A DNA stretch of 64,000 nt from Paraphysomonas bandaiensis (lineage: Eukaryota > Protista > Chrysophyceae). Below are positions 8,936 to 62,706 of this stretch, one piece after another. A program made the position numbers and the translations under genes. The notes under the pieces are model-generated. The model was not told where the DNA came from. It was given only the letters and a program-made list of their open reading frames with translations, and searched no databases. Numbering within the stretch: position 1 is the stretch's first letter; the number at the start of each line of letters is the position of its first letter. The stretch spans positions 62,001 through 126,000 of the forward strand of contig CBFFRP010000181.1 in NCBI GenBank assembly GCA_965644295.1, in the 5' to 3' direction.

Positions 8936-9444
8936 GTCAATACACTTGCTGTACTGTGCAGAAAATTAGTATGATATTGACTGCAGTACACTTTCTTACA
9001 CACTACGTGAAAAACATTAGTGACTAGTTCTAAGTTGACGTTTGTATACTGTAGTAAGAAGAATGTGATTGTAGACGACAGTGCAACGCGGTATGCCTTA
9101 GTCAACGTATCAAAGTTGCAGTGAGTCGCATCAAATATCTCATCAACGATTGCAGGAAAGTAACAACTTATTGAGTTCTTTTCAACAGAATTCAGTTAAC
9201 TTATTTCAATGATAATTTCTCATATATCCAGAAAGTGTATACGGTCCGGGCAAGGTAACATGTTTGAGATTTACTGAATTAATATCAAAAGTAATTATTG
9301 TGTCTGGCTGGCGTGATATATCAAAAACCAAGAAAGCATCGTGAAATTGTGCCTAGGCATGGTAACATCCGCATATTGAGAGTGGAAAGATTACGAGCAA
9401 ACTATATGCTCCATGCATTATCACTTAAAAGCACGTTAGGGGAC

Positions 9445-11166
9445 TCATGCGTCTTCATCATCATCATCCTCTGCTGACTCATCCTCGTCACTATCTCCCT
9501 CCTCATCAGCTTCCTGTAGCCAAACAATGAAGAGCTTCGCAGCTTCTTTCAGATGCTCTAAAGTCTCAAGGGAAATCATGCTCTGCTCTGCACTGTACTC
9601 ATTCCGAGTGAGATCAGTGTGCCAAGCATAAAAAGTTTCCTCTTCAACAATATCTTCATCGTAGAGCTGCTTCAACATCACAGGAAACATGCGTAATAGA
9701 TCAGGATAGCGAGTCCCACAGAACCACTCAGCTGCCTACATATCGTTGGAAGTGAGAGCAGTTAATCAAGTTAAAGTTCGGGCCGTACCGCAATAAGTTG
9801 TCTCTGTTGGATTTCACTACTCTTAGGAGCCAGCAATGTCAAAACATCCTTGTGTTTCTCCACGTCATTATCTGGTATCGAGCTGGAAGTAAATGTCGCT
9901 CCTATGTATATGATGGCTCTATCAGAGGGTCGCAGTGAAGACAGTGTCTGAATGGACCGAAGTTCCTCCACGATGGAAGCAAGATGCTGCTGTTTGGGAA
10001 GAACCACACTAGAAGAGTTCGAAGGGGAGTTGTTATTAAGCCAGAGCTTGAATTGCTCAATGGCTGCATCTGCAGTAATACCATTACAAAAGTAATTGCA
10101 TCAGAGTTACTATATTGATAGAAAACAATGATGAAGTGTTATCGTAATGGAGCCTCCTGGGGAAGGAAAACTGAGAAGCTAATGCTGTCACCCAGACACC
10201 CCCAGGAGGACTATGGTACGATAAATACTGTATGGTCAGATGGGGTTGTCTCATACGTACAAAACCCTGTCATCCCCCGTCATGTAGCCAAATACTGGCC
10301 ACTATGAAGGGGCCCGTCCAATAGATATAGACAGACGTCGGAAGACCGACCAAATATATACTGGTAACAGGGATTCCAATAATATGATATAATAGCAAAG
10401 AATGGCTCGATTTCACTCACCGATACCTTTCCTCAATACCATAGAACATAGCATATAAATACATAACGGCAAAATAGAAGTAGAGCAAAACGTGCCATAA
10501 TGTGGAAAAAATACCTGTAGCTTCACTCTCAGTGTCGACTTCAACATCATCGGCGTCCACTTCAGCTACGTCATCCTTCGATTTTGACTTCTTCTTCGGC
10601 TTCTTCTCTTTCTTCACCTTCGCTGGAGATGACTCACCCTCATCCTTAACATCGCTTTCATCCTTGGACTTCGATTTCTTGTCTTTCTTTTTATCCTTTT
10701 TCGACTCCTTGTCTTTGGTTTCCTTCGCCTTTTTGTGCTGCTTGAGGATGAATGTCGTCAACTTGTGGGTCATGTCACAAGGGTCCTTGGAGCCACATGC
10801 CATACACTTCTGACAGATAATCCCACTTTTAATCTTGTAGTGGGTCTCAGGAAGGCGACAATTCTTACACAAGACAAACGATTCAATATATCGATGCATA
10901 AAATTCTGAAGGTCACCAGTGCTGTGAGCTCCATTGACTATGAATCGATCATCCTCTACACTCATTGTCGTCTGAGCACCAAGTTCACAACCAAAAAACT
11001 TGGTAATCTCTGATGCATCACGATTCAATGCAGTCGCAATATCAGATACATTAACTAACACAGTCTTAATACCATTCCCTCTCCCTTCAACCTTTGGAAC
11101 AATACGAGGCATCTTATACCGATAGGATGGATCATCAACTGCGGTTGTTCCCGCGATATTAATCAT
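9445..11166 (-). CDS. EIF5: Eukaryotic translation initiation factor 5; exons approx. 11166-10515, 10069-9789, 9735-9445
   Basis: N-terminus DDPSYRYKMP...VEGRGNGIKT (GAP Arg), Zn ribbon CKNC...CMAC, Lys-rich boxes, and a C-terminal W2 domain (LYDEDIVEEE...FIVWLQEADEE). Confidence 0.97.
10134..10372 (-). ncRNA. Putative intronic box H/ACA snoRNA in eIF5 intron 1
   Basis: The 445-nt intron has a GC-rich folded core. In transcript sense: H box ACAGTA (10231-10226), lower stem TATCGTA/TACGATA, pocket CCATAGT/CTCCAT, 10-bp upper stem CCTCCTGGGG/CCCCAGGAGG, then ACA (10139-10137) plus 3 nt. The pocket is complementary to LSU helix 69 GGAG-UA-ACUAUG. Confidence 0.7.
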
Positions 11167-11167
11167 G

Positions 11168-11284
11168 TTAACTTTCTTTTATAATAGGATATAATGTACA
11201 ACAACCAAGCCGTCTCCGTGTACGACTTTTAGATATGAGTTCTCGGAATCCTCGTGTGATTTTGCAATGTATACAATGTTGCAT
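11168..11284 (-). promoter_or_regulatory. 38-codon uORF with poor-context AUG in the eIF5 leader
   Basis: TAT-ATG-C (-3 T, +4 C) opens MQHCIHCKITRGFRELISKSRTRRRLGCCTLYPIIKES*. It is out of frame and stops 1 nt before the eIF5 ATG (AAC-ATG-A). Requires a TSS upstream of 11284. Confidence 0.55.
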
Positions 11285-11775
11285 ATAAAGATGCAACAAA
11301 TGATTTCAATAAAAAAAGTTTTTTATTTAATGAATTCTCACCACAGATAAGGGGGGAATATATTTAAGTCGTAATGTATGTATATGATTGTTTCAAGGGG
11401 TTCTGCATGGTCCATGAATATATATATGGATTTGACCATCATTACCACAATTGAGAAACTTCAAAGAACAGCCTGTCAAAGCAGACGTATCTTAAAGAGA
11501 CACTTTCAACAAATTCAGTTGCTTTGGAATTATGCCACTAAAATGTTATCTAGAAATTCCAATTGCTGTTTTTGTCTGTCTGGTCACTAAAAAACTACGA
11601 CTTCGATATATTCTTGCCCAAATATACCCGTTTTCTTCATTTTTAGCAGTTTATTCGAGCACCAGCAGGAGAGTTTTTACAGCGATTATGGAGCAGTATG
11701 TGGTAGATATGATATATATATATGGATATGGCGGATATATAATCATATAGCATCCATAGCATAATATAATAAACT

Positions 11776-13884
11776 ATGTCCTCTGCACCAATCTCTCGCA
11801 TATCATTCTCTAATCGTAACACATCATGTGATGAATCTGAACCCCAATCATCCCCTCTCCATCCTCATCTAGAGAGAAAGACCACTCTATCTCCCAATCC
11901 ACGTACTAGTCGTGTATTATCTCGTGGAAGTATTTATGGAGGTAGAATCTCATATTTAGAGCCAAGGAAGGCTTCTGTAGCCTATCGTGGCAGTGTGATG
12001 GTTGCTATAGCAAGAGAGGCGGATAGTATTAAACAAGAGCTTCAACAGGGCTTCATAGGAAACAGAGTATTTCATATATCGTGGGCTGTATATTTTGTTG
12101 TTTTATCTCTTATTGGTGGATTCATTTTATGTACCTCTGACGACACTAGTTTTGTAGATTCACTATTCGATTCCACAAGTTGTGCTGTGAATAGTGGTCT
12201 TACTGCTGTGTCTGTGGCTGAACGGTCTAAAGCATCTTTTGTATGGATGGCAATCTTGATGCTTCTAGGATCTGGTCCGATTTTACTTCTCCCCACCATT
12301 CTCTTCCGTTGCTACAAACTGAAAAAGCACATACCCAAAATGCAAAGTGCTCTGGCATCTTTGGAGACGCCAGACAGTTCGAAACTCGTAATCCTAGATC
12401 ACTTGCTACTTTATGACGCGAGTATGGTGTCTGCCGTCGTTATCCTTCTTTATGTTTTGTTGTTTCTTCTACTCGGCACCCTTACTCTTACCCTTGCCTA
12501 TCAATTGTATGATATGGAACCAGCTCTTCGGAACCGAGGCTTCACCTTTTTCCAAATAGCTCTTTTTACTGCCGTATCTGCTTTTACCAACTCCGGTATT
12601 CTCCTTTCCCCTGATAGCTTATCGTATTACACTAATAACGCTGCGGTACTGATTATCTTGTCGATAATTATCACCGGTGGGAACGTTTTGCTCCCGGTTT
12701 TGCTAGGTCAGCTTTGCCAGTGTGTGCGCTGGATGAGCAGACACGTTTTAGGCCCCGCACATAGGTGGACCAATGCTCTCGACTACGTTCTCTTAAACCC
12801 ACGTCTCATTACAACACACATGTACTTTCACGGAGAGAATATGTATTTGTTCCAGTTCTTTTTGCTGAGTAACACTCTTATGACGATATTCTTTGCATGT
12901 GTGAGTGCTAATCGCGAAAAAATGATGCAGTACGGCTCCAACTCGGAGGTAGCTCTCTTGGGTCTCTTTCAGATTATCAATGCCCGGCACTCTGGATTTG
13001 CAGTGTTTAATTTTAGAGATTTAGGGTCTGATGTTTTATTCATGTATGCATTGGCAATGTTTCTAGTTCCGGTTCCATATATAGGCGTTCTCAGAGCTAC
13101 CAGTGCGTACACACTTTTGTCGTTGTTGTGTATGTGTGTGTACTTCGTTGTTGTTATGTAGCAATTTCCTTGCATCCACTCTGTAACAATGGTATGTGTG
13201 TTCTTAGGTCAGACTGCGAAAGTTGATGAGAGTGAAATGTTATTAGTGACTGTCATGAAGAAGATTGTGTTCCGCGTATGGTTTCTACGACTTCTCGTTA
13301 TTCTGGCGTTGGTTGTATGCGAGAATCACACGATAGAAGACAACCAAGAGGATGTACAGTTATGGTACATCATATTCGAAGTCATATCCGCTTACAGTAA
13401 GTATTCTTTCGCGCCTACTCATATATCTGGTAAAAATTTATTACTCTGTCTTTGAGTCTGCTAAATATTGGTATTCGTATTTCCGATCGTATGTACGTTA
13501 CCTACTTTGTGCTGCATAGAAGTGGCTCGGAATATAATCTTCTTCTATGATGAACGCCCTTTAATGCTTGTGTTAGGCTTAGTTGGCGTTAGCGTGTCTG
13601 CACCTGGCACAGAATACTCACTCTCAGGAAAATTTACGACATATGGTAAACTTTGTGTCGTACTTGCATTCCTAATTGGGAAGAATAGAGGACTGCCGGA
13701 ACTGTCAGATCCCGTTATAGACTTCACTTTCCCGGAACTTCGAAACGCGTTAGATCAGTATGACAAGCTGGCGAAAATCGGTGGTGCTATTGGAAATGAT
13801 AGAGCCATGTCTCCTATAGAATTGAAAATGATAGAAGAAAATGATGAGAATATTGAGAATGATGTTGGCAATGTAGATTTGTAA
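11776..13884 (+). CDS. Trk/HKT/Ktr-family cation (K+/Na+) transporter, 3 exons
   Basis: Four MPM pore loops: DSTSCAVNSGLT, TAVSAFTNSG, FQIINARHSGF and spliced FEVISAYS|LVGVS. C-terminal SLSGKFTTYGKL...GKNRGLP is typical of Trk/HKT. Confidence 0.9.
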
Positions 13885-14532
13885 TTGGGGAGTCATAATC
13901 GTTCCTCTCGTAATCGTGGTGAATAGTACCTACAAGCAAACGGAAAAATTTTGGCTTGTACGAAGTTGTACCACTATTTCTGATAATGTGTGTGCATTTA
14001 GAAATAGCTTTGTGTAAGTAATGCTCATAAAGACTACAGTTTAATTTGTTCTTTTTAGAGTAAATATAGTGGTTCTGACCGTTTGAATTGCATTGATTTA
14101 CGATTTGCTGATTCAAGTAAAAATATCTCCGTAGGTCCTAGGAAATAAATCTTTCATACTATGCAACTCATCAGTAATCTATTGATAGTCTTCACTTCAA
14201 TGTGCACAATTACAACACGCGTTCTTCTTACTTTTGGTGCGTAATATCGAAAATCGAGACTATTAGGATGTGTTCAACCACTCTAAGTCTTTTTGGTATT
14301 AGTGCTTAGTATATAAGTCGAAGTCAATGTATCACTACTCAATAATCAATTAAATTTAGGACATAGTCACAGTAGACTAAATTTAAAAGTCCATTTAGAG
14401 GGGGGAAAAGCCAATGACATATACATTAATAGCATTACTGTGACTACAAAAAAAGGTTTTCGACGAATCGCACCCCCCCCATAATATTGACACACCACGA
14501 ATACACAATTATTATTCGAATTATAAGAACTT

Positions 14533-16776
14533 TCAAGAGCGACGTAGCCGTGCATTCCACGGCTTGTCCGAGTAACCGCTATTGCTAAGGTCCCCATATA
14601 TCAACCTGGCTTGCGCTTTTGTCATAGCCGGCTTCTTTACCTGTTTCTCGTAGCTAGCAAATCGATCATACCCTTTCTTTGGACTGCTACTTCCATTCAA
14701 CTGTCTTCGTTCTTGACTACTACTCCTACGAGTAGTATTACGCCCACTATGGCTGCTTCTATTCAAACCACTCGTTTCGTGCCCTCGATCATCCGACGGG
14801 CCAATAACACTAGGATAATTTCGATTCCGTTTCATCGCAGCCTGTTGCTCTCTTATCCTCCTGCGGTGATATATATCTTCTTCAACAGCCCTTGCATCCG
14901 ATATGCGATCACTATGATCACTTCGCCTACGGGGACTGAGTAGGGCATCTTCTAGAGTTATCTCTGACGGAGCATTGTCATCTTCCAGACTACCTTCATC
15001 GGCACTCTTTCTACGAGCACGAAGAGAAGTACCTACAACTGTCTCGCGATTGTGGCGGTGGCTGTAACCTTGCACACGGGATTCGTTCACCGCTGCGACA
15101 TGCTTGTCCCAAAGGCGGACATAGCCATTAGGAGTAGACTGTAGCGGCTCGCCTATAGACGATTTAGCGCGCTCTTTTCTAGTGTCACGCTGTCTATCAT
15201 CAGCAGCTCCATGCTCACGAGAAGCACTGCCTGTATCCAGAGACTGGTGTACTACCCGACCATTCCGTCGATGAGACGGTTCTGACAGATAGCTAGCATT
15301 GCGTGATTGCTTTTCAATGGATCTATTCGCAAAGTCAGTTCGTTGGGAATGCTTCGGAGCAGAATGTGTGCGCACGCCGCTCTTCGTTAGATCTTTATGA
15401 TAGGTGCCCGTTCTACTTCGAAGAGGAGAGTGAGACGCAGCTTGTCGTCTAATAGTGGGCTCTACACGAGTTGGGCTAATTTTATTCCTACTACTCTGCG
15501 TGGGCTCCATCAGGGATGATGCACGGCGAGTATAAACTCTTTTCCGCCCCCGCTCGCTCGTGCCACCGTTCTCCTGATTCACAGTAGTATTACCACGGTG
15601 TTCATCAATAGCTGTTGGTGGCTTCAGACCGGTGCGAATTCCATGTGAAGGAGATCGGATGGGAGAACGGCTGGCACGTAGAAGAACATCTGCAGCGGCT
15701 TTGGCCATCGCTGCCCGATGCTCACTGTCCCTGAGCAGAGAGAGTATATAAGACTCATGTAATCATTCAGAACACAGTGAAAAAGCTGGTGCGGTAATAC
15801 ATTCATATCCATAGTGTTCAAAATAAAAAAGCGATACACTTTAATTTGCACCAAGACAAGATCAAATGTAATATACAAGATTAATGGTAATAAACTGTTG
15901 TCTAAAAGAAATAAGTGAACACTCCTCATATGATATGGCGCGTACCGTTGAGCATCGATATCACCTTCCCTTGAGTAACTAGTATAATGGACCCTATCCT
16001 TGACAAGGTAATCAGTTTGAATTGGCGGGGCAGAGTGGTATGATCGGTCGGTGAGCTGATTGCTAGAGTGGGTAATAATATCATACGCCGCAGACACTGC
16101 TGCGAAAGGAACGTAAATAGTATGTATTACATGAAGTAGCAAATCGAAACTATCATGGCAGCAGCACAATATATGTATAACATATGGAAATACATTGTAA
16201 TCGGATGCAATGTATGAAATAGTGCCAATACGTACATATAGCTTCCCGCTTAGTGCCAACTGGGTCAGGTACCACTGATCGATCAGGTTCTCTATAACGT
16301 GGCTTCTCCGCAACAGTCACACCCATGCCCACGACTGGCTCTTTATAGCGAGGTTTCTCCACAACAGTCATACCCTTGCCCATAGCAAATCGTACCCATC
16401 GATGAAACGCCCTTGCCTCAGCTTTAACGATCTGGCACCGGAACACCCACATGCAAGTCATAGTCGCCGCCCGAACATTCTCATTCAAGAGTAAATGGAG
16501 AGGCAAATCAATTGACCCTTTATCATGTTGTTGCTTACGAAGCTGAAATCAATAACAAATATTAGATAATACTGTGATGATAATAGAGGCTATACATACA
16601 GCTGATTTCAGACTCTGTATTTCAGCAATTAATGTGTGTTTCTCCTTATAAGCTCTGTGTATATATCTCATTGAATCCCTTATAATCAGAGGAGTATATG
16701 ATTACCTCTGTAATTGTGAACTTAATCCACTATGTCGCTGATCTGATTTTTGTGTATCATTATCACTATTGTCCAT
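14533..16776 (-). CDS. Uncharacterised multi-exon protein, Arg/Ser-rich and low complexity
   Basis: A 391-codon terminal ORF plus upstream exons (MDNSDNDTQ..., ...RAFHRWVRF...EKPRYKEP/EKPRYREP duplicated) flanked by GT-AG sites. Exon boundaries are approximate. Confidence 0.55.
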
Positions 16777-17479
16777 TGCTATCATATATATATATATGGA
16801 ATAGTAATATACAGATATATGCTCACTGTATTAATTAATATCAGTTATTTACTTATCATTGCATGCAGTTGGCATTCATTTGAATATTGTTTTCATATCA
16901 GGTACTCATGGTTTCCACTGTTCTTATATCTGTTAATAATAATGACCTGTGAAGCCTCATATATAAGTGACAGCGGAGCTATTCATTGCAAACTACAGTC
17001 CAAAAATACATCGCCAATATAGCAGAGTTTTTTTCAACCTTCACGCACACACATCTAGACATACACATATGGACATCAGGATATGATACGTACTGTATGT
17101 CAAAAAACTACAAAGCATCACATACATCCAAGTTCTTCATCATATATTCCCACGTCAGGAGCAGCAAAGACTACTCTACATACGACTTTTATGTTTACTA
17201 TGTATATCATAGTAGAAAGATGAAACGAAGTAAACTGGATTGTGTACGACAAAATCAGTATGAATTGGACAAGAATTATATGATACATACATACATATGA
17301 CATGTACATAAAAGTCATACTAGAATAATCATGAAACTACGAAATTTTGTAGAGTGATATCTATTATTTGTTGCCATATCAAGCGAGAACTGATGTGGAT
17401 TCATATAAGCTGATAGTATATATAATATGATGCTGTTGTAGTGGTGTACATTTTAACATAATACTCACATTATTTAGTC

Positions 17480-20400
17480 ATGCCAGTGGCTAAACATCGA
17501 GCCGATCTAGCTGAGCTCATATCCATTGCAGCCGTGCAAAGGAAACGTTTAAATCATAGGCAAAGACGGCATCATAGCTTGTTTACAACAAGGCGAGAAT
17601 CTCAGCCTCGTATCCGAAAATTCTCAAAATCCATAAAACAGAGATTAGAGAATGTTATTAAAAATGTTTCCCGTCAGGAATGCTCAACTGTACTTGAGGA
17701 AAGTGTGAGTGATTTTGAACAGGAAGATAATCTGCCAGAGAAGGAAACACAGCCTAACGGAAGTAGAAAACAGCAGCGTCAACTGGCACTGCGTTTATCG
17801 AGTCAAATACATTGGTTTCTGGAATTACCTTTGGTTCGATTTTCTCGTCTATTTGTCATTTTCATGGCATTTTTTACACTCTCCTACGAAGCATCTAATG
17901 GAATATCAAGTTTCATGGATAATGCAGTAGTTGAAGCCGATATTGTTATCGACAGCTATTTTATAATGGAAGGCGTTCTCAAGCTGCTTGCCCTCTATGC
18001 CCATCTAGATATGCACAAAGTGTTTCGTCAGAAAGTGGGGGTGATATTATTCCTTCGGCGGTCGGGAATAATCGATATCATAATAGCTTCTTGTAGCGTG
18101 ATATTTGCACGGAATAGGGTAGGCGATTGGTTTCGACTGGTGCGGATTCTTCTGATTTCTTCGTTTGCTTTGGAGGAAATGCCACATTTAGAAGTCCTGC
18201 TAGTAAGTGGCTATAAATTATGTTTTAGTTCGTAGTGGTCTTGATTGAGATCATTCATGTTTGCTCTGTGTGATCTCCTTGTGATATGCTGCGTATATGT
18301 GATCAGATGTTTGTAAGATTCTAATTGTGTTGAATGTATAGAGTGGTATATCATTTGGAATGAGGTCAATCGTGTCCACATGGCTGCTGTTGTCCCTAGT
18401 GTTTCTAGTGTTTGCGTCGTGCGCCTTGACGGTGTTCGAAGATAATGACCCTTTCCATTTCGGGTCCATCGCTCTCAGCATGTGGACATTCTTTGAGCTG
18501 GCAACCTTAGATGTAGGTACTGATGAGTGCTATACCTGTTATATTTATTGGTTTTGTAGAACTGGAGTCGCGTGATGTATATAAACATGTACGGTTGCGA
18601 TTCGTACCCCTCTGACTACACAGCACCTGATAATTCTACTGCCACAACTGAGCGGCACCGTTATGGGAAAATGATATTACCCGTATGTGACAAACCAGAA
18701 GCCCAACCAATTGCGGCGACGGTTATTTTTGTCACTTTTATTATTCTCTGTGGCTTGATATTGATCAATCTGACGATTGCAGCAGTGACAGCCGGTATTA
18801 ACGACAGATTAGATGAACTACGTAAAGAAGATCTCATGCGCGAGCTCAGTGCTGTGGGGCCCCTGGATGCATCCGATGACAAGAGTGGTAAAAATTTAAT
18901 TACTGATCCTGATATGCTTCTGCTTTTGATGCAGCAGGTATGAATTCTGTGAGATGGTTTAACTGCTTGTTCATTGCTGAAAGTCGGTGTGTTTGAATTG
19001 TTGTGTATTTGTGTTTCTACACTGCCGAAAATTTCATAATGAACATCTGGTAGGTATGGAAAGAGCATGACGATCATGCTAGAAAGCAAGCTCGTGCACA
19101 GCATGAAGGAGAGGGGAATTCTCGTGGCATTAGGCAAACTGTTCAGGACCGTTTTACACTGAGCTCTGATGCGAATAACCGCAATAGCTTTTTTTATGTA
19201 TCAACGGCTTTAAAGTGTACGGATATGAGACAGCAAAGTGTATTTATGCGAGATCTGACTGGATATTATCTATATAAGTACGTTGCTGCGACCTTAGTGA
19301 CATTTTCTGCTCTAGTAGAATTATGGTCTCTTCAGCATCCTGAAAGTAGATACACTGCAGACTATGTTCAACTGGTTCTTCAGTTTTTGTTTTCCTTTGA
19401 TTTGTACTGCAAAACAATTGCTTCATATCCAGCTTTCGCAACCTACTACAGGAATCGATGGAACGTCTTTGATACAGCTATAGTCATCGTAACTTGGGTT
19501 CCGGTGTTTACAATAGGAATGAAAGGGAAGGGTGTAAAATACATAGGTAGGGTGATGTACTACATCATGTGTTTGGCAAATATTTTCTGTCGTATATTTG
19601 TCGTAGCGCTTATTTATATATGAACATATATCTACAGTCAGTTTCATATAAGATATTTACTTTTCTTTTAACTATGATTCAGGGTTATTCCGCGTTCTGA
19701 GGATTCTCCGCCTACTTAAAATGCTTACGTGGATCCCGGAGTTAAATGTTATCTTGCATTCGATTGCCTCTTCTGCTCGAGCTCTCGTATACGTTATTAT
19801 GCTTATGTTTGCGTTCTTTTATCACTTTGCTGTTGCGGGCATTTTCCTTTTCGAGGATAATGACCCACAGCATTTTGGATCACTGTTTAAAGCTTTTGTT
19901 ACACTCTTTCAGGTGAGATTTAGTATAACGTGACAGAAATACAACCCCCACTGTACTGAGTGAATAAAATATTTTTTGTAGTGCTCCTCTTTGGATGACT
20001 GGTCAGAGGTTGCCCGGACGAATATGTATGGGTGTGATCTCTATGGATATGATACTGGGGAAGACTACTATGACTCTCAGTGTGTTAATCCTGTGGGGCT
20101 GGGATGGATCGCCGCGTGGTAATAAACATAAGTAGTTGCATACCCACAGCTTCTTTTATATACGTCAGATTTCTTTTAATCTTTCACCTACTTCTATATA
20201 GCTTACATGACATTCGTTGACAGGTACTTTATTCTGATTGTGATCATCGGGGTAATGGTGCTTCTTTCCTTGTTTGTTGGTATCATTATAACGTCCATGG
20301 AACTTCTCAAAGAAGGCATCAAAGAAGAAAAAGAAGTGTGGGCAAAAGTCAAAGTTAAACAGAAACAATACAACATGAGAGATACGACTATAAAGAATCT

Positions 20401-53313: not shown

Positions 53314-54960
53314 ATGTTTTCTGCTTTATTTGGACCTGATCCTGCTTTAAATAATGTCATACGTCCGGAGCTACTCTATATGGAGCTCAATGATGGTAAG
53401 TTAGCAGAAGATGACTACTTAGCCAAGTCGTATAAGTATTTAGGTAAGAGGATATGGAGAATGTAATAGAATGGATATCAATGATGGTATGTGTGTAGGG
53501 GATGTCGTTGCTACACCTCCTCCGAGGGGTCAATATACCAGAGATGATGCCCTTTTAGCTCATCGTGTTAATGATGCTTTGAGTCCAACTTATTCAGGTC
53601 TGGAGCATGGACTCATGCGACTCAGCAATGGAACATGGTATCTTGCCGGAACCACTGAACTAGGATCAGTCACCGGGGAAATGTTTGAGTGGTGGTTCAA
53701 CCACTGTGATTGCTCGGAGAGGTTTCAGTGGTCACATCCCATTCATAACTTGGAGGGAGAATACGACCCCACGTTTTATGCTACGCAACCCGAAGATCGT
53801 ACGTCTATGCCTATATAAAATTGGTGATTTGTAAATGAATGGGTGCTATTGCGGTAGCCCTATTTTTTCTTACACACATCATGCAGTGTTGTACATAGTA
53901 TTATCAGTACTGATCTTCTACATTTTATAGGCCTCCCCGGGCACTACATCGGCCACAGTTTTATCTACAAGCAGCGGATTGGTGAAACAAACTATCGCAT
54001 GCATGTAGATTACTTGAACCCGTCGGAGTATTGTGATACGTCTCTCTTTGTCACTGCTAACGTAACAGCATGCATAACGGGTCAACTGTATCAGTACCAT
54101 AAGGACTTTGGCGAAATATATATTGGCGAAATCGTGTATATTGTGAAGGAGAACGGGATCAGGAACCAACTCGTTACGCGCATGTGGCTGGGAGATGTAC
54201 GCAAAGTCTCCTCTGGCTTTCCGCCGAGCTCATTCGTGAACTATGTAGCTAACTCTTATCTTTACCGTTTGCTTGCAATGCCCTATTCATATGCGTTTGA
54301 TATGTGGAAGCACATACTGGAGGAGAACGGATGCATTGCACACTTGCTACCCCATTTCTATCGTGCTGAGAATGCTCGTCTAAGAGGCAAGAGCGGCGGT
54401 AAAGATTTTAGTGAGGTTGAACAAGAGTTTGAGGAATACAGCGATCCTGAGGAGTCGCCGCGCAGTAAAGAAGGTAAAATACACAATTCGAAGTGCTTAT
54501 CTGTGCGCCTATTATTTAATGTAAACGCTATTTCCCTTGATTGTGCCATTGAGATGCTATTATTTCAGGAAATGCCTGGGAAGAGGTGAGTATGGCCTCC
54601 AGTGTGTCTCCTCGCACCGCCCCTGCTACTACATTCGAAGAAGAATCAGAACCTGACGTTCCAGGTCCTCTTTTAGCTCCTGCTCCTCGTAGTGGTAAAG
54701 CACCCATGCTGAAAACCAAGCAACCATCATTCGAAACTGTGGATTCTGCTCTAGACCCTATATCAATCGATATGTCTGCTGTAAGTGGCGAGAGAAATGC
54801 GAAACATTCTAAAAGAGAAAGCGAAAGCTCTGCTTCAGATGAGGATAGTGAAGACAATGCCTCGGATGCCAGTGGCGAAAGTGCTGGGAGGTTCCAGCAC
54901 TCCAGTAGCTCTGGCAAACCATCTTCAGCTAGTAAATTGGGTGGAGGTGTCGGTGTATAA
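53314..54960 (+). CDS. PhlG/DAPG-hydrolase-like (Bet v1 fold) protein with acidic low-complexity tail; multi-exon, start uncertain
   Basis: NGTWYLAGTTELGSVTGEMFEWWF...ERFQWSHPIH, YIGHS...IG, TRMWLG and MWKHILEENGCIAHLLPHFY follow the PhlG-family pattern (VT.EMFDWWF, WHP..H, RFWLG, H...E..HLA..LP.LY). Confidence 0.7.
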
Positions 54961-55936: not shown

Positions 55937-57734
55937 TTAGGCGGTTTTGCGATTCAATGCAATTCCTGCACGAATCTCTTCAATCAGGTGATCATCATCA
56001 CACATAGCTCGGAAGAAATCTTCTGAGAACTCTCCCTTGGGGGTGAGAAAGTCAGCCATTCGGTCGACCGCCACATGGGCAAAGCATGCTTGCACGAATG
56101 CATCAATAAGGTTGTCTAGGGATAAGCCGAGAGTGTTAAAGTCTTTCCTATCCATCAGTAGCAGACGACCAGATTCAGAAGAGAACAGTCCATGGCCTCT
56201 TACAACTGATAGATTGGTACCCAACATCTCCCAAGACGTCGCACCATCTGGTGATGGTAGGGTATGCGCAAGTGGTTTAGCCGCACGACGAGCGTACATT
56301 GCCACTGGGCGAAATCCGCCACCTGAGGCATTAGCACATACTTGAATTCGCAAATCGCAGACATATATATGGTTCTTCTTGTTCGGTACCGTCCCGTTAT
56401 GGTACAGAGTGGCTCGATTACCACCTTGGAACCCTTTCGAGGACCAGTTCGAGTTCGCAATGAGACTTTGAATAATAAACAGATTGTAAGGATTCCCAGA
56501 TTCCTTGACCTCGAATTCAACAAGTTCTTGTTCTGATGTGATCGTGTACACTCCTTGCCCTCCATTCGAATAAGGAACTTTAATGCAGGCGTGTCCCCCA
56601 AGCTTCTTTACCCACTTGCGGATATCGTTGAACTGCACATCTCGAATTGTAAGCGGAGTGCGAATTCGAGGAAGAGAGGCGGCATCAAGCTCAATTGACA
56701 TATTGTCATATGCCTTGGCGGCTACAAGTTTGTTGCGCCCACCTGCCAAACAGGCTATGATTGGATTCACAATGAATGTACCGCCCAGAGGGAGATGAAC
56801 TGGTATTTTTGACCACGGTTTCTGAGTCACATACCTATACGCAAATAAGTTACGAAATATATCAAAAAATATATAAAAATTGTATTCATACTTTATATAA
56901 ATATTTACAACACATGAAAATGGAGCTGTGAGTCTCACCTAAACGCGGCTCTTATGGGCACCCACTCTTCTGATGTGACTACAGGATCATTCGTCGGTCT
57001 TCTTGTGTAAAGAATATCATTCTCAAACTTGTAAATTGAAGGACCAAAAAGTTCTGTGTTAGACCACGCGGGAATGAGATGCACAGGCTCGCCTATACAT
57101 TTAGTAGATTAAGACTTTTTAGATAGTGGAAGAGTAAAAACCATAACTTACCCGTAATATCTGCCAATGCAGCGGCATACCCAGATACCTCCATAAGGTT
57201 CTTGTCGTAAATAACTCCCAGCTCTCCTTCTGGCAACATTCCCATTTCTTTTCTTCGCTCCATTTCAGGAATAAAGCAATTGCGCAGAAGTTTCCCATAA
57301 CCTCCATCTTCCACAGTTTCATCATAGAGTGGATTGGATTTCTGTCCGGATGCACAAGAGTTTGTTTCAATAATAGTACATCCCGATCGACCACTTTCAC
57401 GTTCTGTAACATACATTAAATCACTACCTGACCATAACATATGCTGCGGTTTATAGTCATTCAAGTATGTCAGTAGTTCAGCACGATCAAATTCAGGTCT
57501 TGTATGACAAAATCTTGAAGCAATTTGTGCATTTGATAAACTTAAAAAATGATGTACAGTTGCATGCATTTGTGCATTTAAACAACGTGGATAGAAGTGT
57601 TCTGAGGGTTCAAATGATCCAGGATGATATGTTCTACTAGGAAAATTTTGTGCACGTTCAGTCATAGGTGATACAACTGGAGTAGAACCACTATCAGGTG
57701 TACTATTCTTTGTTTCACTTTTATCGCCTTCCAT
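55937..57734 (-). CDS. Circularly permuted ATP-grasp amide/peptide ligase, 544 aa; exons 57734-57152, 57092-56939, 56834-55937
   Basis: Exons total 1635 nt in frame. N-terminal GSDL...IIETNSCASG (D...ExN..SG metal site placed first), then IKVPYSNGGQGVY, FIIQSLI and CDLRIQV. Confidence 0.8.
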
Positions 57735-58259
57735 TCTATTTATTTATTTATATAATATGTTGAAAATTATGGTTAGTATGTTAATTTGACGGTCATAAGT
57801 GATGCATTCCAATTACATATGTGGCAGTATGAATTCATAGGGATGGATAGGGAGGTATATATATGTAGTGGATGTATGATATGTACGTGTCCAAAGATTC
57901 CCTCTTGTATTGGTTGGATATTCTGTGATACTACACAGCAACTGGTGTGAAAACATATGTTCTACATATGTACCGTATGGAGTATACAGCTTGTTGTAGT
58001 TATGTTTTCATATGAACATATGTTTGTATCATATAGATGGGTTGGAGGATACGGGATTGATACGGGGGGTGGATGGACCGTTCAATAATGTGATATCCGT
58101 ATTAACTGAGAAAGCCAATTATATGTTCTGTTGAAACATATGGCTAAAGAAAGATGAAGTGAGAGATATCTGGCGTCAGTGAATATGATTCATCATACTT
58201 CATAGTTAAGGTCTCTATAGCTATAGTGCATTATTACTTGTATTGATTACAGTTTAGTT
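57735..58259. promoter_or_regulatory. 525-bp divergent intergenic region (candidate bidirectional promoter)
   Basis: Lies between the ATG of the ATP-grasp gene (-) and the ATG of the SPX-AstE gene (+). Contains several CATATG-centred motifs (e.g. AACATATGTT, GAAACATATG). Function is inferred from position only. Confidence 0.5.
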
Positions 58260-60325
58260 ATGAAATTTCAAAAGTATCAAGCTATCTTTTCTTCTGATGC
58301 AACATGGGCTCAGGATATTGTACGCTACTCAACCTTGAAGAAATTGATCAAGTCTTATGTACGTATGACCAATACAGAAGAGCAGATATCATCTAGTTCT
58401 CAAAAACCAGTTAAAGCTGTTCAATCTAAGCCACGTGAAGGTGGTGGAATTCTAGCTGAATTGGAGAATATGGAGGATGAAAGCAGTGAGGATGAAGAGA
58501 CCTTTCAAACGTTCAATAAAGAGGAGGCTCAGGAGAAAGTTACCCGACTGCTAAAAGAGGATATTGAACGTAGTAATCGCCGATTTGTGGAAGATTTGTC
58601 TAACGTACGAGCCTATGCGAAGGCTCTGGCCGATTCAAGTGAAGCACCTTCTGAGGAAGATTTGCAACAGCTCCGATTGCGAATTAAGAACTGTTTTGAT
58701 TATGCTCGTATACAAGAAGAAGCATTTGATTGTATATTAAGAAAATGGGATAAAGTTATGAATGTGGAGAACGACTGTAGCCTGAATGGTGAAACTTTCA
58801 TGGCAGAGCTTCGTAAGGAGCCCTTCATGGATCATTCATGTCTTGACGAAGAGCTAAATATCTCTCAGCAACTCATGATGCGCCTTGTAGAAGCTAAAGC
58901 ACAAGGAACTAATGAAGTCAACTACAGTGACGCAGACATGGATAAGAGGATTACAGTAGTGAGTGTATTTGATCTTCACATATTGGTTATCATACGCTTT
59001 TCATATTGTGTAAATTCAGGACTCAATGGATATTGGTGTACTTTCACCATGCTGCAAACATCGATTTTGGCTAACGATGATCGAGGATGCCTTTGGTTGC
59101 CACTTGAGAGTACCTGTTATTGTGGTGAAAGGTATTCTTTGTAGTTTGTGTAGGAGAATATATATACAGCATGACTTATTCTCTGACTTAGGCGCTTATG
59201 TTGGACCTGTGGTATGTGTTACCGCTTGTGTACATGGGAATGAACTCAATGGTGTGCCTCTGGTTCACAAACTTGTCGATGATATTGACCCCACAACTCT
59301 GGTCGGGACTATAGTGGCTATTCCCGTGGTCAACGGTCCAGGATATTTGGAAAACAAGAGAGGATTTTCTGACGGTGTAGATCTCAACAGGTGCTTCCCT
59401 GGTAAGTTTTCTCAGGATGATAGTGTGTGGTATATGTGTAATCACACATGTGTTCAGGTCAGCCGGATGGCACACGGTCAAAGCAGTATGCTTATGCTTT
59501 TATTCAAAAAGTGATCAAAAATGTTGATTATTTGATCGACCTACATACGGCCTCCCATGGAAGAGTTAATTCTCTCTATGTGAGAGCAGACCTGCTCAAC
59601 CCCATTGCCAAACAGATGGCTCTACTGCAAAACCCTATGATTGTTGTGCACAACAGGTACGTTTCCCTTGCCATATAGTCATGCGTATTAACTCTTTTAC
59701 TTTCTTCTGCAGTTCTCCTGGCGGGTCACTAAGGGGCGCCGCTCAGGCAATGGGAATCCCAGCAATTACAGTTGAGATTGGCGACCCTGCTCAACTGCAG
59801 TATGATATGATACTTGCTGCATACCAGGCATGTTTTAATATTTCTATTTTATGTTTCTAACGACTATATCTGATATAATGTATGACAGGGAGTGAGAAAC
59901 ATATTGACATTTTTGAATATGCTTACAGAGGAAGGCAACACGAAGCCTCCTCGAGCTCGATTGGTTCTGTGCACATCGAGTAAATGGTTTTACACTGACT
60001 CTGGAGGTAAGGAATTGGTATGCAGTGTTTATAGATTAATTGTAATTGCGACGTTCATTACGTAGCTTTGATATTTTTATAATGGGTTATTTCAACAGGT
60101 ATCTTGGTGGTGCATCCTGATGTAGGTACCTGGATACGCTCCGGCCAAGTTTTTGCCACTATTTTTGACTCTTTTGGTGACCGAGTAAAGGAGTTTATTG
60201 CTCTAGAAGATGCTGTCGTTGTTGGTAAGTCATGTAATCCTGTCGCAAGTGCAGGGGACCGTATCGTTCACCTGGGTTTTGTTGGAAGCACGTTAAATCA
60301 AGGACAACTTGATGGACACGAGTAG
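58260..60325 (+). CDS. SPX domain fused to a succinylglutamate desuccinylase/aspartoacylase (AstE/AspA, M14-like Zn amidase), 559 aa, 7 exons
   Basis: Exons 58260-58958, 59020-59131, 59192-59401, 59458-59656, 59713-59827, 59889-60006 and 60099-60325 total 1680 nt. SPX: MKFQK...W...YSTLKKLIK...AFDCILRKWDK. AstE: TACVHGNELNG, DLNRCFPG, IDLHT, ITVEIG and a C-terminal barrel-sandwich hybrid. Confidence 0.88.
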
Positions 60326-61491: not shown

Positions 61492-62706
61492 ATGGATCGT
61501 GAGGAAACTGCGTATGAAAATTCCCCTCTATCTGTATCAGATACATCAATCCCTGAGTTTGGTATGTATATATATGTATATATATCGCTCTACTCATATG
61601 ATATAAAGGAGATATTGTCACTATGATCTCTCACTCTACTGACTATGGAGAAATGGATCAGATGATAAGATGTGTTAGTGCACGTATATCATGTGAGGTG
61701 GAGAGGTCTGTAATGGACCAATATACCCCTTCACAACACTATCAGGCTTTCTGTAGAGAGCCATCAGCTGAAACCACTAATCCAGAGGTGAGTTGTGTTA
61801 TTGTACTATACTGCTATTGATACTCTTATGTATGTGATAATTAGTAAGTATATTATTTAACACTGTTTATAGAGTTATTCTGTCGATACGGTGCACATAA
61901 TATTCTCCAACATCGCCCAAAAATGCAGAATGGAGATGGAATATGTCGTCCTTACAATGCTGTACTTAGAACGTTTGCCACGATTAACTGATGGTGCATT
62001 TCGCCTCTGTCCTCTCAGCTGGCGGGACACTCTTTCCACTTGTATGTTACTTGTTTGCAAGTTGTGGAACGACAATAAAATCGACAACAGTCGATTTGCA
62101 GATATATGTTCTTCTATCAGTCTGTCCGTTATAAATCGCTTGGAAATTTTACTTCTGCAACTATTTAATTACTCGATGTTTGTCTCCGAACTAGACTACT
62201 GGAAGGGAATGGACATTATCCAAGAGATGATATTTATTGCTAAGTATAAATCTCTCTCTGAATGTAATCGGAGAAGTAGCTGTTCCGCTCCGGCGAGTAG
62301 AACCACTAGTAATGGCAGACTTGAAACGGAGAGTCAGCCGTCTGACTCATCAATCTTAAAGAAGCTGCACGGTTGCACTGTTTCAAGTGAATTACATGTT
62401 CACACACCAAGCATACGCCAGAAGCCAGAGGTTTCTGTTTCTAAAAATAATGGTGGTAATAGCAGTGATGCTAGCATTTCGCCGGGACCCTCGCGTCGAA
62501 AGACACAGCGGCCCGTTTCCGCAAGAATTTTGAATGCTTTTGTTAGGATGGCACGGGCACTACTACCCCACGGTAAAAGGAATAAGAAGGAATCTACAGT
62601 TGCTGTTACCACGAAGAATAATGATAGTAAATATGTGGCTAACACACAGTATGTCCAGACTATAAGTCATGTATCCAGCTCTTCTGGTGAAGAATATGAT
62701 GTATAA
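61492..62706 (+). CDS. Cyclin-box protein (cyclin Y / Pho80-like), 3 exons
   Basis: CRMEMEYVVLTMLYLERL...SWR....CMLLVCKLWNDNKIDN..FA....SVINRLEILLLQLFNYSMFVS is the cyclin-Y-type N-terminal box. Confidence 0.8.

What the first reader, a model, noticed from the sequence alone, without database searches (positions are those of the whole stretch)
55937..60325. Head-to-head ligase/hydrolase pair: circularly permuted ATP-grasp + SPX-AstE/AspA, a candidate phosphate-regulated peptide/polyamide turnover system
Seen: two intron-containing genes diverge from a 525-bp spacer. One encodes an amide-forming ATP-grasp enzyme, the other an amide-cleaving Zn hydrolase with intact HGNE, NR, DLH and E motifs fused to SPX. 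Established: bacterial RimK-type and circularly permuted ATP-grasp ligases are often operonic with peptidases including AstE/AspA-family enzymes, and SPX domains sense inositol pyrophosphates as a phosphate-status signal. Inference: a bacterial-style writer/eraser module has stayed linked in a eukaryote and is now wired to phosphate signalling. It could make and mobilise an acidic peptide, an N-storage polymer (cyanophycin/polyglutamate-like) or a protein tag according to P availability. I know of no described pathway of this form.
Basis: partly seen in the sequence, partly recalled or inferred. Interest (0 to 1): 0.9.

Follow-up and report, generated by a model that had tools for sequence, protein, structure and literature searches.

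The report
Linked ligase and phosphate-sensor-tagged amidase genes
A chrysophyte protist keeps side by side two genes of bacterial type, an uncharacterised ATP-dependent amide-forming ligase and a zinc amide-cleaving enzyme; in eukaryotes the amide-cleaving enzyme carries a phosphate-status (SPX) sensor domain. The same pair sits together in most bacterial relatives and in several distant eukaryotes, so it points to an undescribed small-molecule make-and-break pathway.

Summary
Two intron-containing genes diverge from a 525-bp spacer. The minus-strand gene (544 aa) is identical to a Paraphysomonas transcript. It belongs to a large, highly conserved family with no Pfam model. Its predicted fold best matches circularly permuted ATP-grasp ligases: eukaryotic glutathione synthetase, 3k1t/3n6x and glutathionylspermidine synthetase. 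The plus-strand gene (559 aa) is a divergent but real SPX domain fused to an intact DoeB-like AstE/AspA zinc amidohydrolase.

The linkage is not chance.
- In 60 of 81 bacterial loci an AstE gene lies within 1.3 kb of the ligase. A glutathione-synthase-like second ligase often lies between or beside them.
- The pair is also adjacent in Balamuthia and on two metagenomic eukaryotic contigs.
- Both genes occur, unlinked, in Plasmodiophora and Coemansia.
- Eukaryotic SPX-AstE proteins form one clade nested among the bacterial ligase-linked AstEs.

Best reading: a make-and-break pair for a small, probably anionic amide metabolite, with breakdown placed under inositol-pyrophosphate control in eukaryotes. 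The product, the polymer idea and the phosphate regulation remain untested. I found no description of the module or the fusion in the searchable literature.

The parts
57152..57734 (-). Ligase gene, exon 1 (ATG at 57734). It carries the conserved ETNSC.SGQKS block (E123-x-N125).
   Evidence: Splice model. The protein is identical to transcript product P0001. Invariant columns are listed in A1.
56939..57092 (-). Ligase gene, exon 2. It is flanked by GT-AG introns at 57151-57093 (59 nt) and 56938-56835 (104 nt).
55937..56834 (-). Ligase gene, exon 3 with the stop codon. It carries K331-VPYSNGGQGV (Lys plus Gly-rich loop), Q368SLI and D406-L-R408.
   Evidence: AF2 model with pLDDT 89.5. Foldseek hits to permuted ATP-grasp ligases.
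57735..58259 (.). 525-bp divergent intergenic spacer, presumably a shared promoter region. It holds the only two exact AACATATGTT palindromes of the window, at 57952-57961 and 58015-58024.
   Evidence: One GNATATNC site lies at 57916, but the motif is not enriched in the window.
58260..58958 (+). SPX-AstE gene, exon 1: a divergent SPX domain (residues 1-233). At the inositol-phosphate-binding positions it has Y23, K27, K165 and C158, R161, K162.
   Evidence: Pfam 20.4 bits, below cut-off. 45 bits against the family profile built without it. Family profile against SPX structures, E about 1e-24. AF2 model and Foldseek hit SPX only.
59020..59401 (+). SPX-AstE gene, exons 2 and 3 (59020-59131 and 59192-59401), separated by a 60-nt in-frame intron. 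They hold the start of the AstE/AspA catalytic domain, with H285-G-N-E288 and L-N336-R.
   Evidence: Pfam AstE_AspA_cat E 1.6e-16. Junctions checked. Conserved columns.
59458..59827 (+). SPX-AstE gene, exons 4 and 5 (59458-59656 and 59713-59827). They hold D368-L-H370 (third zinc ligand) and E428 (general base). Exon 5 is followed by the GC-AG intron 59828-59888.
59889..60325 (+). SPX-AstE gene, exons 6 and 7 (59889-60006 and 60099-60325, including the stop). They encode the C-terminal beta domain of DoeB-like AstE enzymes, ending in the conserved DGHE.

Best explanation
The two genes encode the two halves of a make-and-break cycle for one small, probably carboxylate-rich amide metabolite. Candidates are an N-acyl amino acid, an acidic di- or tripeptide of glutathione-like build, or possibly a polyamine conjugate.

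The 544-aa enzyme is a glutathione-synthetase-like, circularly permuted ATP-grasp ligase. It would activate a carboxylate as an acyl phosphate and join it to an amine. The partner is a DoeB-like AstE/AspA zinc amidohydrolase that would hydrolyse that bond again.

The module arose in bacteria. There it is an operon that often includes a glutathione-synthase-like second ligase, and sometimes a mechanosensitive channel or polyamine-synthesis genes. This fits a cytosolic solute or storage compound.

Eukaryotes inherited the ligase-hydrolase core. The hydrolase gained an N-terminal SPX domain once. Breakdown, and so the pool size, is probably tuned by inositol pyrophosphates, that is by phosphate status. 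The two genes share a bidirectional promoter here.

Shown: the gene models, the folds, the intact catalytic residues, the conserved linkage, the co-occurrence and the single origin of the fusion. Inferred: that both enzymes act on the same compound, what that compound is, and that SPX regulates the hydrolase.
For: Ligase fold:
- AF2 model with pLDDT 89.5 and pTM 0.91.
- Best Foldseek hits are 3k1t, 3n6x, human, yeast and plant glutathione synthetase, GspS and trypanothione synthetase, and Cp1B, all at probability 1.0.
- Sub-threshold RimK and MptN hits occur in permuted order.
- The window protein shares all 77 columns that are invariant across the 40 aligned family members.

Hydrolase:
- Pfam AstE_AspA_cat.
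- The nearest solved structures by sequence are 3cdx, 3na6 and DoeB. NCBIfam's best model is DoeB.
- The catalytic H285, E288, H370 and E428 and five conserved Arg residues are present.

Linkage in bacteria:
- AstE is present in 62 of 81 loci and lies within 1.3 kb in 60, often overlapping the ligase stop codon.
- A second ATP-grasp gene is present in 45 of 81 loci.
- MscS is present in 14 of 81 loci. A decarboxylase (Orn_Arg_deC_N), agmatinase and deoxyhypusine-synthase trio is present in 7-9 loci, in two different arrangements.

Linkage in eukaryotes:
- Window: head-to-head, 525 bp.
- L090: head-to-head.
- L088: head-to-head, 2.8 kb.
- Balamuthia: tandem.

Co-occurrence without linkage: Plasmodiophora (P0300 and P0453) and Coemansia RSA1813 (P0290 and P0483).

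Phylogeny: the eukaryotic AstE clade (98/98) is nested in the ligase-linked bacterial AstEs.

SPX.
Against: - No biochemical datum exists for either family, so the substrate is a guess.
- Sequence methods do not connect the ligase to any ATP-grasp family.
- Foldseek TM-scores are only 0.35-0.49.
- 21 of 81 bacterial loci lack a nearby AstE. Eight of these are cut short. The Lewinellaceae-type loci have pabB, Aminotran_4, ligase, mscS and fhs instead.
- Galdieria, Picocystis-like, Mortierella, Chytridium and Plasmodiophora loci show only one of the two genes within 10 kb.
- The ligase tree splits eukaryotes into two groups. An all-eukaryote clade is only just not rejected (AU p = 0.057).
- The window's SPX is sub-threshold in Pfam and has Cys at one lysine-cluster position. 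Relatives P0123 and P0281 have lost the SPX motifs.
- Co-transcribed ligase and hydrolase could equally be successive steps of one pathway.
Confidence: 0.55

Rival explanations
1. The two enzymes are successive steps of one biosynthetic or salvage route, not antagonists. One version: the ligase attaches a protecting or carrier group and the AstE-like enzyme removes it later, as LysX and LysK do in LysW-mediated lysine synthesis. Another version: the hydrolase releases from an N-acylated precursor the amine or acid that the ligase then uses.
For: - Operons usually unite steps of one pathway.
- Many bacterial loci hold a second, GshB-like ligase, which suggests a multi-step assembly line.
- Some loci add pabB, Aminotran_4 or polyamine genes.
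Against: - The core conserved in most Myxococcota, Bdellovibrionota and all eukaryotic loci is only the two genes, with no modifying enzyme between protection and deprotection.
- AstE, ASPA and DoeB are catabolic enzymes (my own knowledge).
- A sensor domain on the hydrolase alone fits control of a pool better than control of a pathway intermediate.
Confidence: 0.2
2. A protein-tagging writer and eraser. The ligase adds amino acids to the C-terminus or a side chain of a protein, as RimK or the tubulin TTLL enzymes do. The carboxypeptidase-fold AstE enzyme trims them, as RimB or the CCP enzymes do.
For: - ATP-grasp writers paired with peptidase erasers are an established pattern (RimK and RimB: PMC11957051).
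- AstE/AspA has the carboxypeptidase-A-like fold (my own knowledge).
- Weak RimK hits.
Against: - The best structural matches are small-molecule ligases, not RimK (rank 28 and lower).
- No conserved small target-protein gene is present in the loci.
- The hydrolase's nearest relatives act on small N-acyl amino acids.
Confidence: 0.1
3. The SPX-AstE enzyme works on its own substrate, for example an N-acetyl or N-succinyl amino acid, independently of the ligase. The adjacency is inherited synteny without a shared metabolite.
For: Several eukaryotes show SPX-AstE without a ligase within 10 kb, and ligase loci without AstE. I could not test whether Mortierella or chytrids have the ligase at all.
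Against: - Linkage is kept across at least seven bacterial phyla with rearranged gene order. It is also kept in eukaryotes of at least three supergroups, in both head-to-head and tandem form.
- Both genes are present in Plasmodiophora and Coemansia although unlinked.
- The eukaryotic AstE clade derives from the ligase-linked bacterial subfamily.
Confidence: 0.1
4. The pair is bacterial contamination or a recent transfer of no consequence in the assembly.
For: Both proteins are about 45-55% identical to bacterial ones.
Against: - The two genes contain eight spliceosomal-type introns.
- The ligase is identical to a transcript of the MMETSP transcriptome project.
- The hydrolase carries a eukaryotic SPX domain.
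- G+C content is like the rest of the window.
- The neighbouring ORFs are eukaryotic in type, for example a cyclin.
Confidence: 0.01

Closest known systems
Glutathionylspermidine synthetase/amidase (E. coli Gss; trypanothione synthetase-amidase)
   Same: A glutathione-synthetase-like ATP-dependent ligase is paired with an amidase that hydrolyses the ligase's own product, which gives a regulated pool. The synthetase domains are among the Foldseek hits (2io7, 2vob, 3o98). Polyamine genes neighbour some bacterial loci.
   Different: In Gss the amidase is a cysteine (CHAP) peptidase fused to the ligase. Here it is a zinc AstE/DoeB-like enzyme encoded by a separate gene. There is no detectable sequence similarity, the substrate is unknown, and the eukaryotic hydrolase carries SPX.
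Eukaryotic glutathione synthetase and the structural-genomics proteins 3k1t and 3n6x (circularly permuted ATP-grasp ligases)
   Same: These are the best fold matches, at probability 1.0 with TM-scores of 0.35-0.49. The putative Mg-binding E-x-N block lies N-terminal to the Lys and Gly-loop block. Size is about 480-550 aa.
   Different: No Pfam, NCBIfam or PDB sequence hit. This is a separate family of at least 2,400-3,600 proteins with 77 invariant columns across the 40 aligned members.
DoeB (N-alpha-acetyl-L-2,4-diaminobutyrate deacetylase), AstE and aspartoacylase
   Same: Same Pfam catalytic domain. Zinc ligands and general base are conserved. DoeB is the best NCBIfam model and is among the nearest solved structures.
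   Different: Scores are far below the DoeB equivalog cut-off (72-83 bits against 402.7). This is a distinct subfamily defined by linkage to the ligase, and in eukaryotes it has an N-terminal SPX domain.
SPX-enzyme fusions such as Vtc4 (SPX-polyphosphate polymerase) and Gde1 (SPX-glycerophosphodiesterase)
   Same: An N-terminal SPX domain precedes a catalytic domain. The SPX structures of Gde1, Vtc4 and XPR1 are the top fold hits.
   Different: All described SPX outputs handle phosphate or phosphoesters (my own knowledge). This one would cleave a carbon-nitrogen amide bond. Full-text searches for SPX together with aspartoacylase, succinylglutamate desuccinylase or deacylase found no paper on it.
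RimK with RimB, and TTLL with CCP (writer and eraser pairs)
   Same: An ATP-grasp amide-forming enzyme is genetically or functionally paired with a peptidase that reverses it (for RimK and RimB).
   Different: Those pairs act on protein C-termini or poly-glutamate. Here the fold and the hydrolase subfamily point to small molecules, and RimK structures rank low.

Membership tests
ATP-grasp superfamily (glutathione-synthetase-like, circularly permuted) | ATP-grasp fold of the GS, GspS or permuted type | tested here: met
   AF2 model with pLDDT 89.5 and pTM 0.91. 42 PDB matches at E <= 0.001, nearly all ATP-grasp ligases. The top 27 are permuted or GS-like enzymes. TM-scores are modest (0.35-0.49).
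ATP-grasp superfamily (glutathione-synthetase-like, circularly permuted) | Permuted order: the C-terminal Mg-binding E-x-N element precedes the ATP-binding Lys and Gly-rich loop | tested here: inconclusive
   The invariant E123-T-N125 lies upstream of K331-VPYSNGGQG. In P0017 the MptN profile positions 245-272 hit residues 95-125, while the RimK-family profile positions 100-174 hit residues 281-353. All these hits are below threshold, and I could not inspect model coordinates.
Pfam CP_ATPgrasp_1, CP_ATPgrasp_2, RimK and GSH_synth families | Match to the family HMM at the gathering score | tested here: not met
   No Pfam hit for the window protein at E <= 1. Relatives give only chance-level RimK or YheCD hits. 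The A1 profile finds no ATP-grasp sequence in the PDB. hhalign against the neighbouring GshB-like family gives probability 0.4%.
ATP-grasp superfamily | ATP-dependent carboxylate-amine ligase activity through an acyl phosphate | not testable with these tools
   Needs an enzyme assay.
AstE/AspA (succinylglutamate desuccinylase/aspartoacylase, PF24827) | Match to the catalytic-domain HMM | tested here: met
   The exon pieces score 60.9 and 28.2 bits against a cut-off of 25. Full-length relatives score 87-122 bits.
AstE/AspA (PF24827) | Zinc ligands His-x-x-Glu plus His, and the catalytic Glu | tested here: met
   H285, E288, H370 and E428 are present. The window agrees with all but one of the subfamily columns that are at least 93% conserved.
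DoeB equivalog (TIGR02994) | Score above NCBIfam's equivalog cut-off (402.7 bits) | tested here: not met
   72-83 bits for bacterial and eukaryotic members. The proteins are related to DoeB but are not DoeB.
SPX domain (PF03105) | Match to the Pfam HMM at the gathering score (27.8 bits) | tested here: not met
   The window N-terminus scores 19.2-20.4 bits. Orthologues P0122, P0129, P0135 and the L088 protein score 55-64 bits.
SPX domain (PF03105) | Homology and helical SPX fold | tested here: met
   45 bits (E 6e-16) against a profile of orthologous N-termini that excludes the window. That family profile hits XPR1, Vtc4 and plant SPX structures at about 1e-24. The AF2 model (pLDDT 81.8) has six helices, and its top 35 Foldseek hits are all SPX, with target-normalised TM up to 0.76. 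Caveat: the alignment used for folding contains canonical SPX sequences.
SPX domain (PF03105) | Basic inositol-phosphate-binding surface: Tyr, Lys and Lys of the phosphate-binding cluster, and three Lys of the lysine surface cluster (positions recalled from Wild et al. 2016, my own knowledge) | tested here: inconclusive
   Y23, K27 and K165 are kept. The lysine cluster reads C158, R161, K162, where most orthologues have K..KK. Binding itself was not tested.

The most novel reading that the evidence does not exclude
The pair defines an undescribed, widely distributed metabolic module, present in thousands of bacterial and many protist and early-fungal genomes. It would synthesise and degrade a still unknown small amide compound. 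In eukaryotes the level of that compound would be set by inositol pyrophosphates through a new class of SPX protein, SPX-amidohydrolase. This would be the first SPX output that acts on a C-N bond rather than on phosphate. It would link phosphate status to nitrogen, osmolyte or polycation balance, for example counter-ions for polyphosphate.
Probability: 0.35. Interest if true: 0.85.

Novelty: new variant of a known kind. Interest (0 to 1): 0.72.

Why it matters
- It gives a name and a testable partner to a large 'dark' enzyme family. The family has no Pfam model and its members are about 50% identical between bacteria and eukaryotes.
- It adds an amide hydrolase to the short list of catalytic outputs of SPX phosphate sensing.
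- It offers a rare case of a bacterial operon core that has stayed physically linked in several eukaryotic supergroups. Such linkage is strong guilt-by-association evidence for function.
- Finding the metabolite could reveal a new compatible solute, storage compound or thiol- or polyamine-type peptide. It could also show how protists and early fungi couple it to phosphate supply.

Tried and rejected
- Pfam and NCBIfam on the ligase exons and on full-length relatives gave nothing usable.
- A profile search of PDB sequences with the ligase family gave only a chance hit.
- hhalign of the ligase family against the neighbouring GshB-like ligases gave probability 0.4%, although the short aligned stretch was the Lys and Gly-loop.
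- The plant and algal phosphate-starvation element GNATATNC occurs once in the spacer but is not enriched in the window (20 sites found, 22 expected).
- A search for a GshB- or RimK-like gene in the window and in the eukaryotic loci found none.
- Literature searches found no description of the module or the fusion. The terms were SPX with aspartoacylase, deacylase or succinylglutamate desuccinylase; ATP-grasp with desuccinylase and gene cluster; 'circularly permuted ATP-grasp'; and Gasu_38420. Iyer et al. 2009 on amidoligases is not held in the library.
- My first single-linkage clustering of neighbour ORFs was spoiled by spurious high-GC ORFs. I replaced it with targeted BLAST.
- The spliced 559-aa SPX-AstE protein has no reference form and was not found in the protein collection. 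It could therefore not be folded or searched whole. I used its exons, the SPX exon with alignment A2, and orthologues instead.
- I rejected contamination, chance adjacency and a polymer synthetase of the cyanophycin or polyglutamate type. The last is not excluded but has no support.


Full report
WHAT IS THERE

The window is eukaryotic, with about 40% G+C and short introns. The region holds two divergent genes.

The minus-strand gene has three exons: 57734-57152, 57092-56939 and 56834-55937. It encodes 544 aa. That protein is identical to P0001, a transcript product of MMETSP1103 from Paraphysomonas, a heterotrophic chrysophyte.

The plus-strand gene has seven exons between 58260 and 60325 and encodes 559 aa. 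One of its introns (59828-59888) has GC-AG ends. The model aligns without gaps at every junction with orthologues. The start codons are 525 bp apart.

THE LIGASE

Pfam sees nothing in the exons or in the full protein. NCBIfam gives only sub-threshold RimK and MptN hits. Their order is permuted in one relative, P0017.

The protein belongs to a very conserved family:
- 2,426 and 3,670 hits in two searches, mostly bacterial proteins of about 480 aa at 50-56% identity.
- 77 invariant columns across 40 diverse members, all shared by the window protein.
- No member carries a precomputed Pfam domain.

With this alignment AlphaFold gives a confident model (pLDDT 89.5, pTM 0.91). Its best PDB matches are:
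- the structural-genomics proteins 3k1t and 3n6x;
- human, yeast, potato and soybean (homo)glutathione synthetases;
- glutathionylspermidine and trypanothione synthetases, and YjfC;
- the E-64 pathway ligase Cp1B (identified from the title and abstract listed).

RimK and D-Ala-D-Ala ligases come further down. These top matches are the permuted or GS-like branch of the ATP-grasp fold. The invariant E123-x-N125 block lies N-terminal to the K331 and Gly-loop block.

Sequence-profile methods cannot confirm the relationship. So 'circularly permuted ATP-grasp-like ligase' is a fold-level assignment to a new family. It is not membership of the Pfam CP_ATPgrasp or RimK families.

THE HYDROLASE

Exons 2-5 match Pfam AstE_AspA_cat. 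The nearest solved structures by sequence are 3cdx, 3na6 and DoeB, the N-acetyl-diaminobutyrate deacetylase of ectoine breakdown. DoeB is also the best NCBIfam model, far below its cut-off.

H285, E288, H370 and E428 are in place, and so are all but one of the subfamily columns that are at least 93% conserved. These columns include five arginines, which suggests an anionic substrate. The enzyme looks active.

THE SPX DOMAIN

Exon 1 scores only 19-20 bits on Pfam SPX against a cut-off of 27.8. Other evidence shows it is a real SPX domain:
- The closest relatives of the AstE domain in a search of 1.84 billion representatives are long proteins. Seven of the ten I scanned carry SPX, with whole-protein scores from 23 to 64 bits.
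- The window's N-terminus scores 45 bits against a profile of those N-termini built without it.
- That family profile hits XPR1, Vtc4 and plant SPX structures at about 1e-24.
- An AF2 model of exon 1 (pLDDT 81.8) retrieves only SPX domains in its top 35 matches.

The ligand-binding positions are recalled from Wild et al. 2016 (my own knowledge). At these positions the window keeps Y23, K27 and K165, and has C158, R161, K162 where most orthologues have K..KK. Two close relatives (P0123, P0281) have lost the motifs altogether. The SPX is real but divergent in this lineage, and its ligand binding cannot be assumed.

IS THE PAIRING MEANINGFUL?

In bacteria, yes. I fetched 80 bacterial loci by the ligase and added two from exact look-ups. 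The ligase ORF was called in 81 of them. In those 81 loci:
- An AstE gene of the same subfamily (42-49% identical to the window's) is present in 62. It lies within 1.3 kb in 60, usually on the same strand and often overlapping the ligase stop codon.
- Eight of the 21 remaining loci have less than 2.2 kb of downstream sequence.
- In 45 loci a second ATP-grasp gene lies between or beside the two. It is a glutathione-synthase paralogue that scores below NCBI's equivalog cut-offs.
- A mechanosensitive channel gene (MscS) is in 14 loci. In Lewinellaceae-type loci that lack AstE it directly follows the ligase.
- A trio of an Orn/Arg-type decarboxylase (Pfam Orn_Arg_deC_N), an agmatinase-type enzyme and a deoxyhypusine-synthase-like enzyme, read here as a polyamine operon, is in 7-9 loci. 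It appears in two different arrangements and in two phyla.

In eukaryotes, the pair is adjacent in four loci:
- this window: head-to-head, 525 bp;
- L090, a metagenomic relative whose ligase is 64% identical: head-to-head, about 270-450 bp;
- L088, an intron-poor 802-kb eukaryote-type contig: head-to-head, 2.8 kb, with a second SPX-AstE paralogue nearby;
- the amoebozoan Balamuthia mandrillaris: tandem, 478 bp apart, with introns.

The two genes are not within 10 kb of each other in Galdieria, a Picocystis-like contig, L091, Mortierella, Plasmodiophora, Chytridium or Coemansia. Plasmodiophora and Coemansia sp. RSA 1813 nevertheless have both genes elsewhere in the genome.

EVOLUTION

SPX-AstE proteins occur in Amoebozoa, Rhizaria, stramenopiles, dinoflagellates, chytrids, Kickxellomycotina, Mortierellomycotina, Glomeromycotina and Basidiobolus.

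In a careful tree the eukaryotic AstE domains form one clade (98/98). It includes the window, Balamuthia, L088, L090, the fungi and Plasmodiophora. The clade is nested within the bacterial ligase-linked AstEs and is separated from other AstEs by a 100/100 branch. This argues for one origin of the eukaryotic gene from that subfamily and one SPX fusion.

The ligase tree shows two eukaryotic groups:
- Group A: chrysophytes including the window, Picocystis and Galdieria. Support 100/99.
- Group B: Balamuthia, Kickxellomycotina, Plasmodiophora, Chlorarachnion and L088. This group sits next to two Myxococcota sequences.

An AU test does not quite reject a single eukaryotic clade (p = 0.057). Both groups contain linked pairs.

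HOW IT PROBABLY WORKS

GS-like ATP-grasp enzymes join a carboxylate to an amine through an acyl phosphate. AstE, ASPA and DoeB enzymes hydrolyse exactly such N-acyl amino-acid bonds in small molecules (established knowledge of the families).

I therefore favour a make-and-break pair acting on one small, carboxylate-rich amide compound. The reasons are:
- the two-gene core is conserved, often with translational coupling;
- the hydrolase has a conserved arginine-rich site;
- many bacteria add a GshB-like second ligase, which fits a di- to tripeptide logic;
- some loci add MscS, which fits a releasable cytosolic solute, or polyamine genes.

In eukaryotes the SPX domain sits on the hydrolase only. 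This suggests that degradation is the regulated step and that it responds to inositol pyrophosphates.

The nature of the compound is open. It could be an osmolyte-like acidic peptide, a glutathione-like peptide or a polyamine conjugate. A polymer or a protein tag has no specific support.

NOVELTY

Ligase-amidase pairs are a known kind (Gss, RimK and RimB, TTLL and CCP). This ligase family is undescribed in Pfam and NCBIfam. The AstE subfamily is distinct from DoeB, AstE and ASPA. An SPX-amidohydrolase is not mentioned in any paper of the searchable library. Databases only auto-name members 'SPX domain-containing protein' or 'predicted deacylase'.

LIMITS

- There is no biochemistry for either family.
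- Foldseek TM-scores are moderate.
- The full spliced SPX-AstE could not be submitted whole.
- The eukaryotic census is anecdotal. It rests on 12 exact look-ups of encoding contigs, which yielded 11 eukaryotic loci.
- Whether Mortierellaceae and chytrids have the ligase is unknown.
- The contig is not human, and no restricted step arose.

Noticed in passing
window 59828-59888: The fifth intron of the SPX-AstE gene has GC-AG rather than GT-AG ends. The flanking exons join in frame and align without a gap to orthologues.
   Followed up: partly
window 61891-62706 (+): An ORF 1.5 kb downstream of the SPX-AstE gene hits Pfam PF08613, the PHO80-like cyclin family (E 9e-6). This puts a phosphate-pathway-type cyclin next to an SPX gene, which may be coincidence.
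   Followed up: no
window 53471-53818 (+): An upstream neighbour ORF hits the DAPG hydrolase (PhiG) domain (E 2e-12). It is probably part of a multi-exon gene that extends to about 54960.
   Followed up: no
window 57952-57961 and 58015-58024: The only two exact copies of the 10-nt palindrome AACATATGTT in the 64-kb window lie 63 bp apart in the shared spacer. A third similar copy lies at 58129-58142. These are candidates for a shared cis-element.
   Followed up: partly
L088 10001-11992 and 20565-21992: This eukaryote-type metagenomic contig carries two SPX-AstE paralogues (P0284 and P0170, 95% identical in the AstE domain) 8.5 kb apart, plus the ligase head-to-head with the first.
   Followed up: partly
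P0142 (protein); P0141, P0154 and P0199 clade: A sister group of the SPX-AstE clade has other N-terminal extensions. P0142 is a HutD-AstE fusion. The same hydrolase has therefore been fused to different N-terminal domains.
   Followed up: no
L034, L049, L052, L055, L068, L075 (about 9000-14500 in those fetched with full 10-kb flanks): In Lewinellaceae and Haliscomenobacteraceae the ligase sits in the order pabB-like, class-IV aminotransferase, ligase, mscS, formate-tetrahydrofolate ligase, with no AstE nearby. Coemansia (L093 7744-8985) also has a class-IV aminotransferase just upstream of its ligase, and a Pho88 gene just downstream.
   Followed up: partly
L002 4523-7800; L050, L061, L064 about 13500-17500: A trio of a decarboxylase (Pfam Orn_Arg_deC_N), an agmatinase-type enzyme and a deoxyhypusine-synthase-like enzyme (read as a polyamine operon) neighbours the module. 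It is either divergent upstream or co-directional downstream. It is found in Bacteroidota and in a gammaproteobacterium (Halioglobus).
   Followed up: partly
P0123 and P0281: The closest full-length relatives of the window's SPX-AstE, both from marine protist transcriptomes, have N-terminal regions in which the SPX lysine motifs are gone. This suggests that the sensor is decaying in part of this lineage.
   Followed up: partly
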